DNA from: Setoptus koraiensis
Taxonomy: Eukaryota > Animalia > Arthropoda
DNA length: 64,000 nucleotides
NCBI GenBank assembly: GCA_048013815.1
Contig: CM106585.1
Coordinates: forward strand, 1 to 64,000
Direction: 5' to 3'
Shown here piece by piece: positions 55,961 through 57,302 of the stretch. Made by a program: the position numbers and the translations under genes. A model generated the notes under the pieces. The model was not told the origin of the DNA, made no database searches, and saw nothing but the letters and a program-made list of their open reading frames with translations. The first letter of the stretch is position 1. Each line of letters starts with the position of its first letter.

Positions 55961-56412
55961 CAACAATAATAATCGTGGTCAAGTGATCAAAAGAAGACGA
56001 AAGAAATTAATTAATAGAACTATTGTCAATGGTAACAGTGATCAACAAATAATTAATCAATTGGATTACTTTGGTGATGATGGAGACACAAACAAATTAA
56101 GTGACGACACCAACAACAACAAAATTGACAATTCGTTTGTTTCATATCAATTAAGCTCATCTGAAATCATTTTGAACGGACATGACCTTCTAGACATAAA
56201 CGAGGCTCTATCGCGAATCGCCTACGTCAATTATAGGGACTATCCATCGTTGACAACAACAAGAACGATTAACTTGGTAACCAATATCAATTGTTTAGGT
56301 AACAATATATTACAAGGGGAGCCATCAGCTATTGTCATTGATCCAATTAATATTGATACCATAATGAGCCAATTCGATCTGGATAATTCCATTTATCGTC
56401 ACAACACTTTGT
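55961..56412 (+). repeat. Duplicated fragment of calsyntenin exon 7 (source 50459-50913)
   Basis: Essentially identical for ~400 nt, then several substitutions and a 3-nt deletion in the last ~55 nt. Confidence 0.97.
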
Positions 56413-57302
56413 CCAATACTACCACTACTACAATAACGCAAACAACCACCATTACAGCTGATGTATCATGGACGAGCACATTTGCAAAACGCCGCAAACT
56501 ATCGGTCACCAAATCTGCCAAGTCCACAAAATCTGCCAAACCCGCCAAACTTGCCAAACTTGCCAAACGTATCAAAAGCGCCAGTGATAAACCCCTACCT
56601 CGTGGCTGGCATACCATAAATCTTAGTCAAATCAATGATTTGATTGGATGCAAGCTATGCGGTGGTTATCTCATAGATGCCACTACAATCACAGAGTGTT
56701 TGCACTCATTCTGCCGAAAATGCTTGGTGATCCATCTGCAAAATAGCAGCAATTCCTGTCCAAAATGTAGCATCTCTCTTCCTGGAGCTAAACCGTTCGA
56801 CAACATTAGGTCCGATCCAACGTTACAGGAAATTGTGTACAAATTGGTGCCAAATCTCTTCACCAATGAGATGAAGAGAAGAAAGAAATTTTATAAAAAT
56901 GCCCCACCAGAAGTATTAGTCAATTTGACTAGCGAAGAACGAGGTGATGTCAGATACGGTCATCCTGTTTATGGACCAAATGATACAGTATTCGTTACAC
57001 TTGTATCAACACCATATTGGACACCATTCAAGCCAAAACACACCATAACAGATACCTCCCCGTCCGATGAAAAAAATTGTGAGGAAGAGCGTATATATTT
57101 AAAGTGTCCTGGCACAGTGTCAGTGGCAAACCTCAAGAAATTGTTAATTATGAGATATGAGCTGCAGGCTTGTCATAGTATTAATATTCTCTACGAAGAT
57201 GATATTCTATCTGATAATTGTCCAATGATAGATCTCGTATACTCAAATTCCTGGATGCAAACTGCGCCTCTTTGTCTGCATTTTAAAATTACAAAAATCT
57301 AA
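56364..57302 (+). CDS. Polycomb group RING finger protein (BMI1/PCGF2/Psc type) copy 1, with calsyntenin-derived start (312 aa from ATG 56364; frame open from 55902)
   Basis: C3HC4 RING CKLCGGYLIDATTITECLHSFCRKC...CPKC, RSDxTLQEIVYKLVPNLF and C-terminal RAWUL domain (YLKCPG...DLVY...W). Intronless. Confidence 0.85.
   Translation: MSQFDLDNSIYRHNTLSNTTTTTITQTTTITADVSWTSTFAKRRKLSVTKSAKSTKSAKPAKLAKLAKRIKSASDKPLPRGWHTINLSQINDLIGCKLCGGYLIDATTITECLHSFCRKCLVIHLQNSSNSCPKCSISLPGAKPFDNIRSDPTLQEIVYKLVPNLFTNEMKRRKKFYKNAPPEVLVNLTSEERGDVRYGHPVYGPNDTVFVTLVSTPYWTPFKPKHTITDTSPSDEKNCEEERIYLKCPGTVSVANLKKLLIMRYELQACHSINILYEDDILSDNCPMIDLVYSNSWMQTAPLCLHFKITKI

What the first reader, a model, noticed from the sequence alone, without database searches (positions are those of the whole stretch)
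55961..57302. Calsyntenin exon fragment fused in frame to a Polycomb BMI1/Psc-type RING gene
452 nt of calsyntenin exon 7 (50459-50913) is copied 5.5 kb downstream in the same frame as the PCGF ORF. The first in-frame ATG (56364) is calsyntenin-derived: MSQFDLDDSIIHRHNTL became MSQFDLDNSIYRHNTL. Nearly all differences fall from just before this ATG onward, and the preceding ~400 nt are essentially identical. The peptide is followed by a Thr tract, KRRK (NLS-like) and a Lys/Ala repeat (KSAKSTKSAKPAKLAKLAK) reminiscent of histone H1 tails. This looks like a very young chimeric chromatin regulator. A 466-aa form is possible only with a non-AUG start or an upstream exon.
Basis: partly seen in the sequence, partly recalled or inferred. 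Interest (0 to 1): 0.8.

Follow-up and report, generated by a model that had tools for sequence, protein, structure and literature searches.

The report
Polycomb gene with borrowed start codon
In this mite genome, a conserved gene-silencing (Polycomb BMI1-type) gene lost its own front end, which was patched with 464 bases copied from a neighbouring calsyntenin gene; that patch most likely supplies only the start codon and 18 amino acids, a real but modest case of gene-front-end replacement.

Summary
Window 50452-50916, inside a calsyntenin-like exon, is copied to 55954-56417 on the same strand, in frame with a RING+RAWUL (BMI1/Psc-type PCGF) ORF. The only in-frame ATG before the RING finger (56364) lies in the copy.

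A syntenic contig from a sister species (Logan SRR33593474) settles the history:
- Its ortholog has about 540 nt with its own ATG and 40 unrelated codons where the window has the calsyntenin piece.
- Homology resumes exactly at 56418.
- The event is therefore a lineage-specific replacement, not a plain insertion.
- The Thr tract, KRRK and Lys/Ala repeat are ancestral PCGF sequence (dN/dS 0.11), not new.

"Very young" is doubtful.
- The first 388 aligned nt show no differences. The last 60 nt show 8 substitutions and a 3-nt indel.
- Those changes fall on both source and copy lineages.
- That fits an older capture after the species split, followed by a recent gene-conversion tract.

RING_A is strongly constrained: dN/dS is 0.067 against the ortholog, with 0 nonsynonymous and 5 synonymous changes since it split from tandem paralog RING_B.

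At most 18 domain-less calsyntenin residues are translated, and nothing supports the 466-aa form. No expression data could be checked. Earlier scan notes report other front-end swaps in this genome.

The parts
50452..50916 (+). Donor segment inside a late exon of the calsyntenin-like gene (exon-like ORF 49959-51308)
   Evidence: Pfam CLSTN_C scores 26 bits here (sub-threshold) and 41 bits (above the 27-bit cut-off) in the next exon, 51409-53094. The sister-species ortholog is P0002/L002.
55954..56358 (+). Body of the copied piece. It is identical to the donor and is the inferred recent gene-conversion tract. Under the ATG-56364 model it is 5' leader or untranscribed.
   Evidence: 0 differences in 388 aligned nt, against 69 differences of either copy to the outgroup. 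It contains 5 out-of-frame ATGs with short ORFs.
56359..56417 (+). Diverged tail of the copied piece. It holds the only in-frame ATG (56364) and 18 calsyntenin-derived codons (MSQFDLDNSIYRHNTLSN).
   Evidence: 8 substitutions plus a 3-nt indel against the donor. 3 are copy-derived, 2 plus the indel are donor-derived, and 3 are ambiguous.
56364..57302 (+). Most likely coding sequence of RING_A (312 aa plus stop), a BMI1/Psc-type PCGF
   Evidence: ORF. Pfam finds RING and RAWUL. Residues 85-309 match human BMI-1 residues 7-227 at E = 5e-47. dN/dS against the ortholog is 0.067.
56418..56587 (+). Ancestral pre-RING extension of this mite lineage: Thr tract, KRRK and Lys/Ala repeat. The repeat is a 9-nt tandem at 56534-56568, 36 nt longer than in the sister species.
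   Evidence: Homology to sister contig L001 resumes at 56418. dN/dS is 0.11 over 47 codons. TRF result. phmmer aligns query residues 19-312 to P0001 residues 41-322.
56649..56768 (+). C3HC4 RING finger
   Evidence: Pfam zf-C3HC4 and zf-C3HC4_2, residues 250-289 of the 466-codon frame. All eight metal ligands lie in invariant alignment columns.
57096..57284 (+). RAWUL ubiquitin-like domain
   Evidence: Pfam PF16207, 55 bits, residues 399-461 of the 466-codon frame. AlphaFold2 pLDDT is about 90.
55777..55839 (+). Conserved non-coding block upstream of the patch. It is a candidate retained promoter or leader element of RING_A.
   Evidence: Local alignment to L001 3782-3848. Further short conserved patches extend to about 55893.
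57636..58535 (+). Tandem paralog RING_B. It is homologous to RING_A only from 57881 (= 56588), and its N-terminus resembles Misshapen/TNIK/MAP4K4.
   Evidence: PDB phmmer match to TNIK/MINK1/MAP4K4 at E = 4e-4. 29 nonsynonymous against 15 synonymous branch changes.

Best explanation
RING_A is the BMI1/Psc-type PCGF gene (RING + RAWUL, a PRC1 subunit) of an intron-poor mite. Earlier notes call the mite eriophyoid-type.

After the split from the sequenced sister species, about 0.54-0.6 kb of the gene's front was lost. That stretch held the ancestral start codon and the first 40 codons. It was replaced by 464 nt copied from an internal exon of the calsyntenin gene 5.5 kb upstream on the same strand. 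The likely route is ectopic templated repair of a break (inferred).

The patch landed in frame. Its single in-frame ATG (56364) now most likely starts translation, giving a 312-aa protein. The first 18 residues are calsyntenin-derived. The rest is ancestral and strongly constrained: Thr tract, KRRK, Lys/Ala repeat, RING and RAWUL.

The event is older than the near-identity suggests. A recent gene-conversion tract of at least 400 nt re-homogenised the 5' part of the patch with its donor. Only the last roughly 60 nt still show the true divergence.

Functionally the product should act as an ordinary PCGF partner of RING1/Sce. The calsyntenin piece carries no domain. It serves as start-codon donor and possibly as 5' leader.
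For: Shown:
- The duplication and the frame.
- RING + RAWUL and the best match to BMI-1.
- The sister contig L001 is syntenic: the upstream small gene, a conserved non-coding block, then RING_A. It has unrelated sequence with its own ATG where the patch sits, and homology resumes at 56418.
- No remnant of the sister's N-terminal exon survives in the window.
- Body 0/388 differences against tail 8/60 plus an indel. JC distances in the tail: source-copy 0.147, source-outgroup 0.30, copy-outgroup 0.33. Tail changes fall on both lineages, and the 3-nt indel is an insertion in the donor.
- RING_A against its ortholog: dN 0.045, dS 0.66, dN/dS 0.067. The pre-RING segment alone gives 0.11.
- Since the A/B split, RING_A has 0 nonsynonymous and 5 synonymous changes (P = 4e-4 against neutrality).
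- ATG 56364 is the only in-frame ATG upstream of a pre-RING segment that is under coding constraint.
- No terminal inverted repeats or target-site duplications flank the piece.

Inferred: the repair mechanism, use of ATG 56364, and the direction and recency of the conversion.
Against: - No transcript, ribosome-profiling or read-level data could be consulted. This species is absent from the protein collection.
- Only one outgroup species is available, so polarisation of the tail rests on 8 sites and one indel.
- If transcription starts at the conserved upstream block, seven out-of-frame upstream ATGs precede 56364. The sister species has a similarly ATG-laden upstream region.
- The conversion-tract end lies within about 10 nt of the ATG. 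That coincidence is also what selection acting on a new coding tip would produce.
- The 0N:5S count covers the branch since the A/B duplication. Its timing relative to the patch is only roughly comparable.
Confidence: 0.6

Rival explanations
1. A very recent duplication (about 0.25% divergence) created the chimera. The cluster of differences from the ATG onward reflects rapid adaptive change of the new coding tip, or error-prone synthesis at the junction, on the copy only.
For: The body is identical over 388 nt. Differences begin 5 nt before the ATG. Three tail changes are copy-derived, including D>N and H>Y.
Against: Two substitutions and the 3-nt indel are shared by copy and outgroup, so they arose in the donor gene. 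A very young copy cannot explain three or more donor-lineage changes in 60 nt alongside none in 388 nt. I estimate chance convergence with the outgroup at well under 1% jointly.
Confidence: 0.13
2. The calsyntenin piece is not translated at all. The protein starts elsewhere: at a spliced upstream exon, at a non-AUG codon, or by internal initiation. The patch would be only leader, intron or promoter-proximal filler.
For: Seven out-of-frame upstream ATGs lie between 55895 and 56182. Eriophyoid genomes preferentially retain 5' introns (PMC7738191). There are no expression data.
Against: The pre-RING segment 56418-56587 is under coding constraint (dN/dS 0.11), and its repeat expanded in multiples of 3. 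Translation must therefore begin at or before 56418, and 56364 is the only in-frame ATG there. The frame upstream of the patch is closed at 55893. The sister ortholog's ORF also starts at a local ATG with a stop just upstream.
Confidence: 0.15
3. The replacement removed the start and promoter context and killed RING_A. It is a young pseudogene whose ORF has not yet decayed.
For: The ancestral ATG and 40 codons are lost. A tandem paralog, RING_B, exists and could in principle take over.
Against: RING_A has 0 nonsynonymous and 5 synonymous changes since the A/B split, while RING_B has 29 and 15 (Fisher P = 0.008). RING_B is the relaxed copy, not RING_A. The ORF is intact, and every invariant RING/RAWUL column is kept. 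The tail divergence implies enough elapsed time for decay to show.
Confidence: 0.08
4. Assembly artefact: the calsyntenin fragment was mis-joined or mis-polished into the PCGF upstream region.
For: 388 nt are identical to a sequence 5.5 kb away. No independent assembly of the junction was found (a blank there says little).
Against: The copy has its own diverged 60-nt tail, a codon-precise in-frame junction, and a clean resumption of orthology at 56418. A collapse or chimeric read would not generate a diverged tail.
Confidence: 0.04

Closest known systems
BMI1 / PCGF4 / Drosophila Psc (PCGF subunits of Polycomb repressive complex 1)
   Same: The architecture is an N-terminal C3HC4 RING followed by RAWUL. 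Residues 85-309 align to human BMI-1 residues 7-227 at E = 5e-47, a better match than to PCGF1, PCGF5 or PCGF6. All invariant columns are kept.
   Different: An N-terminal extension of about 85 residues precedes the point where canonical PCGFs start. It has no predicted structure. Among 1.8 billion cluster representatives it is shared only with the sister-species ortholog. There is no C-terminal tail after RAWUL. The first 18 residues come from calsyntenin.
Young chimeric genes formed from partial duplicates, such as Drosophila jingwei or Sdic (from memory) and Hun Hunaphu (PMC1463047); reviewed in PMC3449122
   Same: A fragment of one gene is duplicated and recruited as the new 5' end of another. 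The donor is identifiable, the fragment is absent from the sister species, and the retained part is under selection.
   Different: The recipient here is not a redundant duplicate but the constrained copy of a conserved Polycomb gene. The foreign part replaces the ancestral start rather than adding a domain. It comes from the middle of an exon, brings no promoter, and contributes only 18 residues.
Interlocus (ectopic) gene conversion between nearby paralogous segments (for example PMC3966223 on Caenorhabditis paralogs)
   Same: A tract of about 400 nt has zero divergence and abuts a stretch with about 15% divergence. The repeats are in the same orientation, 5.5 kb apart. Conversion makes the duplicate look younger than it is.
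   Different: The converting partners are an internal coding exon and what is probably a 5' leader of an unrelated gene. The conversion is inferred from one genome and one outgroup, not from population data.
Calsyntenin (alcadein; C. elegans CASY-1)
   Same: The donor gene carries the Pfam CLSTN_C signature (41 bits) and a transmembrane stretch followed by an acidic cytoplasmic tail.
   Different: The copied piece is a poorly conserved, Asn-rich linker part of the ectodomain (dN/dS about 0.2 between species). No calsyntenin domain or function is transferred.

Membership tests
PCGF (BMI1/Psc-type Polycomb group RING finger) | C3HC4 RING finger near the N-terminus of the conserved core | tested here: met
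   Pfam zf-C3HC4 at 37 bits and zf-C3HC4_2 at 37 bits, both above their cut-offs. The eight Cys/His ligands fall in invariant alignment columns.
PCGF (BMI1/Psc-type Polycomb group RING finger) | C-terminal RAWUL ubiquitin-like domain | tested here: met
   Pfam PF16207 at 55 bits against a 33.5-bit cut-off. AlphaFold2 pLDDT is about 90 over residues 240-312.
PCGF (BMI1/Psc-type Polycomb group RING finger) | Closest to the BMI1/PCGF4 subgroup rather than PCGF1/3/5/6 | tested here: met
   PDB phmmer gives BMI-1 164 bits, PCGF1 113, PCGF5 93 (RING only) and PCGF6 65. Named database hits are BMI-1-like.
PCGF (BMI1/Psc-type Polycomb group RING finger) | Heterodimer with RING1/Sce and stimulation of H2A mono-ubiquitylation | not testable with these tools
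   This needs co-IP or an in vitro ubiquitylation assay.
Calsyntenin (donor gene) | Calsyntenin C-terminal region (Pfam CLSTN_C) | tested here: met
   41.3 bits against a 27-bit cut-off in exon 51409-53094. The copied exon itself and the copy score only 26 and 25 bits, which is sub-threshold.
Calsyntenin (donor gene) | Two N-terminal cadherin repeats and a LamG-like domain | tested here: inconclusive
   Cadherin scores 17.8 bits at 38444-39046 and Laminin_G_2 scores 18.8 bits at 49959-51308. Both are below their cut-offs.
Lineage-specific chimeric gene by partial duplication | Identifiable donor, in-frame junction, absence from a sister species at the orthologous site | tested here: met
Lineage-specific chimeric gene by partial duplication | Chimeric transcript and protein actually made | not testable with these tools
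   There are no data from this species in the searchable collections.
Lineage-specific chimeric gene by partial duplication | Selective constraint on the recipient after the event | tested here: met
   dN/dS is 0.067 against the ortholog. The RING_A branch has 0 nonsynonymous and 5 synonymous changes. The timing relative to the event is approximate.
Ectopic gene conversion | Sharp switch from zero to substantial divergence within one duplicate, with changes on both lineages outside the tract | tested here: met
   0/388 against 8/60 plus an indel. Polarisation gives 3 copy-derived, 2 plus the indel donor-derived, and 3 ambiguous, using a single outgroup.
Transposon-mediated gene-fragment capture (Pack-MULE or Helitron type) | Terminal repeats or target-site duplication flanking the captured piece | tested here: not met
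   No inverted or direct repeats bracket 55954-56417. The event also deleted about 540 nt of resident sequence.

The most novel reading that the evidence does not exclude
Front-end replacement may be a systematic process in this streamlined mite genome, not a one-off. Both tandem copies of its BMI1/Psc-type gene have lost the ancestral start. Each runs on a start codon borrowed from an unrelated gene: a calsyntenin internal exon for RING_A and a Misshapen-kinase first exon for RING_B. Earlier scan notes list several other genes with swapped front ends. In this reading, breaks at gene 5' ends are routinely patched with pieces of other genes, and ongoing gene conversion then ties the borrowed leader to its donor. 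That would make 5'-end turnover a major and still-active route of gene evolution in eriophyoid mites.
Probability: 0.2. Interest if true: 0.65.

Novelty: new member of a known kind. Interest (0 to 1): 0.4.

Why it matters
This is a clean, datable natural example of a core, strongly constrained Polycomb gene surviving the loss of its own start codon. It did so by co-opting an ATG from a fragment of a neighbouring, unrelated gene. It also shows how gene conversion can make such an event look far younger than it is.

On its own it is unlikely to change PCGF function, because only 18 domain-less residues are new. Three things together suggest that 5'-end replacement may be unusually frequent in these miniaturised mite genomes:
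- the second paralog's Misshapen-derived N-terminus;
- the fragment duplications in the same intergenic region;
- earlier notes of other swapped front ends in this genome.

That hypothesis can be tested with transcriptomes and a few more eriophyoid genomes.

Tried and rejected
1. Transposon capture: no terminal inverted repeats or target-site duplications around the piece. Rejected.
2. Remnants of the sister species' N-terminal exon in the window: sensitive blastn and tblastn found none.
3. Any calsyntenin similarity in the sister's RING contig: only a 30-nt chance-level hit.
4. More outgroups or orthologs of the donor exon: only P0002 was found.
5. Independent assemblies of the chimeric junction, searched with a junction-spanning peptide: blank, which is uninformative.
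6. Third-species orthologs sharing the N-terminal extension: the exhaustive phmmer search found only P0001, and all other PCGFs align from query residue ~85.
7. Donor of RING_B's Misshapen-like piece: not in this window.
8. Structure model: only RAWUL is confident. The RING is poorly modelled with a 20-sequence alignment, so it was not used for fold search.
9. The 'histone H1-like' reading of the Lys/Ala repeat: it is a 9-nt slippage array, 36 nt longer than in the sister species. I found no evidence for more than a basic low-complexity tail.
10. Literature: no paper linking Eriophyoidea and Polycomb.

Full report
**1. Observation**

The repeat finder reports a direct repeat with a 5502-nt offset. 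Pairwise alignment and a base-by-base comparison place the donor at 50452/50459-50916 and the copy at 55954/55961-56417. The 5' edge lies in an AAC-rich stretch and is uncertain by about 7 nt.

The copy keeps the donor's reading frame and runs without a stop into ORF 55902-57302. That frame is closed just upstream by TGA at 55893-55895 (read). ATG 56364 lies inside the copy. It is the only in-frame ATG before the RING finger. Seven other ATGs between 55895 and 56182 are out of frame and open ORFs of 1-20 codons.

**2. What the two genes are**

- Pfam finds a C3HC4 RING and a RAWUL domain in the ORF. This is the PCGF architecture.
- Against solved structures, residues 85-309 of the 312-aa ATG-56364 product align with human BMI-1 residues 7-227 (E = 5e-47). 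That is a better match than to PCGF1, PCGF5 or PCGF6.
- In a 20-sequence alignment, every invariant RING/RAWUL column is retained.
- The donor gene carries the calsyntenin C-terminal signature above threshold in the next exon (41 bits). The copied exon scores 26 bits, just below threshold.
- Cadherin and LamG signals in upstream exons are weak and sub-threshold.
- The donor gene ends at 53094. A separate small gene (ATG 54152) lies between it and the copy, so the copy is outside the calsyntenin gene.

**3. The sister-species comparison**

The protein search returned two Logan-only proteins from one run, SRR33593474. P0001 is a 322-aa RING+RAWUL protein and P0002 is the calsyntenin exon ortholog. 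Their contigs were fetched as L001 and L002.

L001 is syntenic with the window:
- L001 125-828 matches the small upstream gene at 54152-54854.
- A non-coding block at L001 3782-3848 matches 55777-55839.
- L001 4472-5327 matches 56418-57309.

Between the conserved block and 56418, the sister species has about 540-620 nt of unrelated sequence. This includes its own ATG (L001 4352, with a stop 12 nt upstream) and 40 codons (MVHNSELQAM...). It has no similarity to calsyntenin. The window keeps no trace of that sequence.

The exhaustive phmmer search confirms the boundary at protein level. Query residues 19-312 align with P0001 residues 41-322 at 91% identity. The 18 calsyntenin-derived residues match nothing.

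The event is therefore a replacement in the window's lineage: a deletion plus a templated patch. They are shared with P0001. The Lys/Ala repeat is a 9-nt tandem array that is 36 nt longer in the window.

All other PCGFs in a 1.8-billion-protein library align only from query residue ~85, at their own residues ~6-10. The roughly 85-residue extension is thus specific to these two mites. It has no predicted structure, with pLDDT 33-45.

**4. Age of the event and gene conversion**

With L002 as outgroup:

| Region | Sites | Source vs copy | JC source-copy | JC source-outgroup | JC copy-outgroup |
|---|---|---|---|---|---|
| Body | 388 aligned nt | 0 differences | 0 | 0.20 | 0.20 |
| Tail (56359-56417) | 60 | 8 substitutions + one 3-nt indel | 0.147 | 0.30 | 0.33 |

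An earlier count of 1/405 against 9/54 gave Fisher P = 2e-8.

Polarisation of the tail gives 3 changes on the copy, 3 ambiguous, and 2 substitutions plus the indel on the donor. Copy and outgroup share the shorter length and the Ser codon where the donor now has Phe.

A very young copy cannot account for donor-lineage changes packed into 60 nt with none in 388 nt. The simplest reading has two steps:
1. A capture after the species split. On this small sample, its age is roughly half the between-species distance.
2. A recent gene-conversion tract of at least 400 nt between donor and copy.

The tract ends within about 10 nt of ATG 56364. This may be coincidence (I estimate about 4%), or it may reflect selection against overwriting the coding tip. 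I cannot distinguish these.

**5. Selection**

| Comparison | Codons | dN | dS | dN/dS |
|---|---|---|---|---|
| RING_A vs ortholog | 282 | 0.045 | 0.66 | 0.067 |
| Pre-RING extension only | 47 | 0.081 | 0.73 | 0.11 |
| RING_A vs RING_B | 218 | 0.060 | 0.16 | 0.37 |

The pre-RING extension has therefore been translated for most of the time since the species split.

Branch changes since the A/B split, with the ortholog as outgroup:
- RING_A: 0 nonsynonymous, 5 synonymous (P = 4e-4 against neutral expectation).
- RING_B: 29 nonsynonymous, 15 synonymous, omega about 0.5.
- The two branches differ (Fisher P = 0.008).

RING_A is therefore the constrained, functional copy. The A/B synonymous distance (0.16) is similar to the tail distance (0.147). 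Much of this constrained period probably post-dates the patch, but that timing is approximate.

**6. Start codon**

The segment from 56418 onward is under coding constraint. The frame is closed at 55893. The simplest start is ATG 56364, which has A at position -3, like the sister's ATG.

The 466-codon frame is open only because the patch is inherited from, and kept identical to, a coding donor. Nothing supports its translation.

An upstream spliced exon cannot be excluded without RNA data. Eriophyoid genomes are about 84% intronless but preferentially keep 5' introns (PMC7738191).

**7. Mechanism**

This section is inference. There are no terminal repeats or target-site duplications, and resident DNA was deleted. 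This argues against transposon capture. It favours ectopic templated repair of a break, using a template 5.5 kb away on the same strand. Microhomology at the 3' junction is at most 1-2 nt.

A 14-of-15 match between the 5' junction (55942-55972) and an internal part of the patch (56092-56122) may hint at template switching, but it lies in low-complexity sequence.

**8. Context**

RING_B (57636-58535) is homologous to RING_A only from 56588/57881 onward. It starts with a 25-residue match to the N-terminus of TNIK/MINK1/MAP4K4 kinases (E = 4e-4). This confirms another first-stage note (s1-330803). That donor is not in the window.

Just upstream, 54865-55156 is a decayed partial copy of the promoter and first exon of the small gene at 53921-54210.

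Earlier follow-up notes on this genome call it an eriophyoid-type mite and list other genes with replaced front ends. I did not test those. My own evidence for the taxon is limited:
- The best named hits are chelicerate, and among mites acariform, BMI-1-like proteins.
- The window is intron-poor.

**9. Comparison with what is known**

The protein is a member of the BMI1/Psc PCGF family by every sequence criterion I could test. The origin of its 5' end belongs to the known class of chimeric genes formed from partial duplicates (PMC1463047, PMC3449122). The masking of age by interlocus gene conversion is also known (PMC3966223).

Four features are less usual:
- The recipient is the constrained copy of a core Polycomb gene.
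- The foreign piece comes from the middle of an exon and replaces the start rather than adding a domain.
- Both tandem paralogs carry different borrowed N-termini.
- The borrowed piece is still exchanging sequence with its donor.

I rate it a new member of a known kind, of moderate interest.

**10. Limits**

- No expression, read-level or population data were available.
- Only one outgroup species was available.
- The tail statistics rest on nine events.
- Whether other PCGF genes exist elsewhere in the genome was not determined.

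Noticed in passing
window 57636-58535: Tandem paralog RING_B starts with about 25 residues matching the N-terminus of Misshapen/TNIK/MAP4K4 kinases, followed by a His/Pro-rich linker. The match ends at GAG|GTAGGT (about 57708-57716), which looks like the donor gene's first splice donor read through. RING_B evolves at omega about 0.5 and has a 57-nt in-frame deletion in the RING-RAWUL linker, opposite about 57024-57080 of RING_A.
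   Followed up: partly
window 53921-54210 and 54865-55156: A direct repeat of about 290 nt at 89-92% identity. The second copy is a decayed partial duplicate of the promoter and first exon of a small signal-peptide gene (ATG 54152). Its ATG is mutated and part of the exon/intron boundary is deleted. This is another fragment duplication in the same intergenic region.
   Followed up: partly
window 56534-56568 vs L001 ~4570-4590: The Lys/Ala repeat is a 9-nt tandem array (TGCCAAACT x 3.9). It is 36 nt (12 codons) longer in the window than in the sister species, an in-frame slippage expansion.
   Followed up: yes
window 55942-55972 and 56092-56122: The 5' junction of the patch resembles an internal stretch of the patch (motif GAYGACACCAACAA, 77% over 31 nt). 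This could be a template-switch footprint or low-complexity chance.
   Followed up: no
window 55350-55950: A GC-rich island (48-50% against about 35% background) sits immediately upstream of the patch. It contains short blocks conserved with the sister species, for example ATCCACCAGGYGCG at about 55815-55830. It is a candidate promoter for RING_A.
   Followed up: partly
L001 829-3680: The sister species has about 2 kb more DNA than the window between the small gene and the PCGF gene. It includes ORFs at 1413-1652 (+) and 2589-3278 (-). The latter has no Pfam match; the former was not scanned. This DNA is absent from the window.
   Followed up: no
window 10631-14125 (-): A single 1164-aa ORF with three destabilase (i-type lysozyme) domains separated by long Asn/Ser/Thr-rich linkers.
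   Followed up: no
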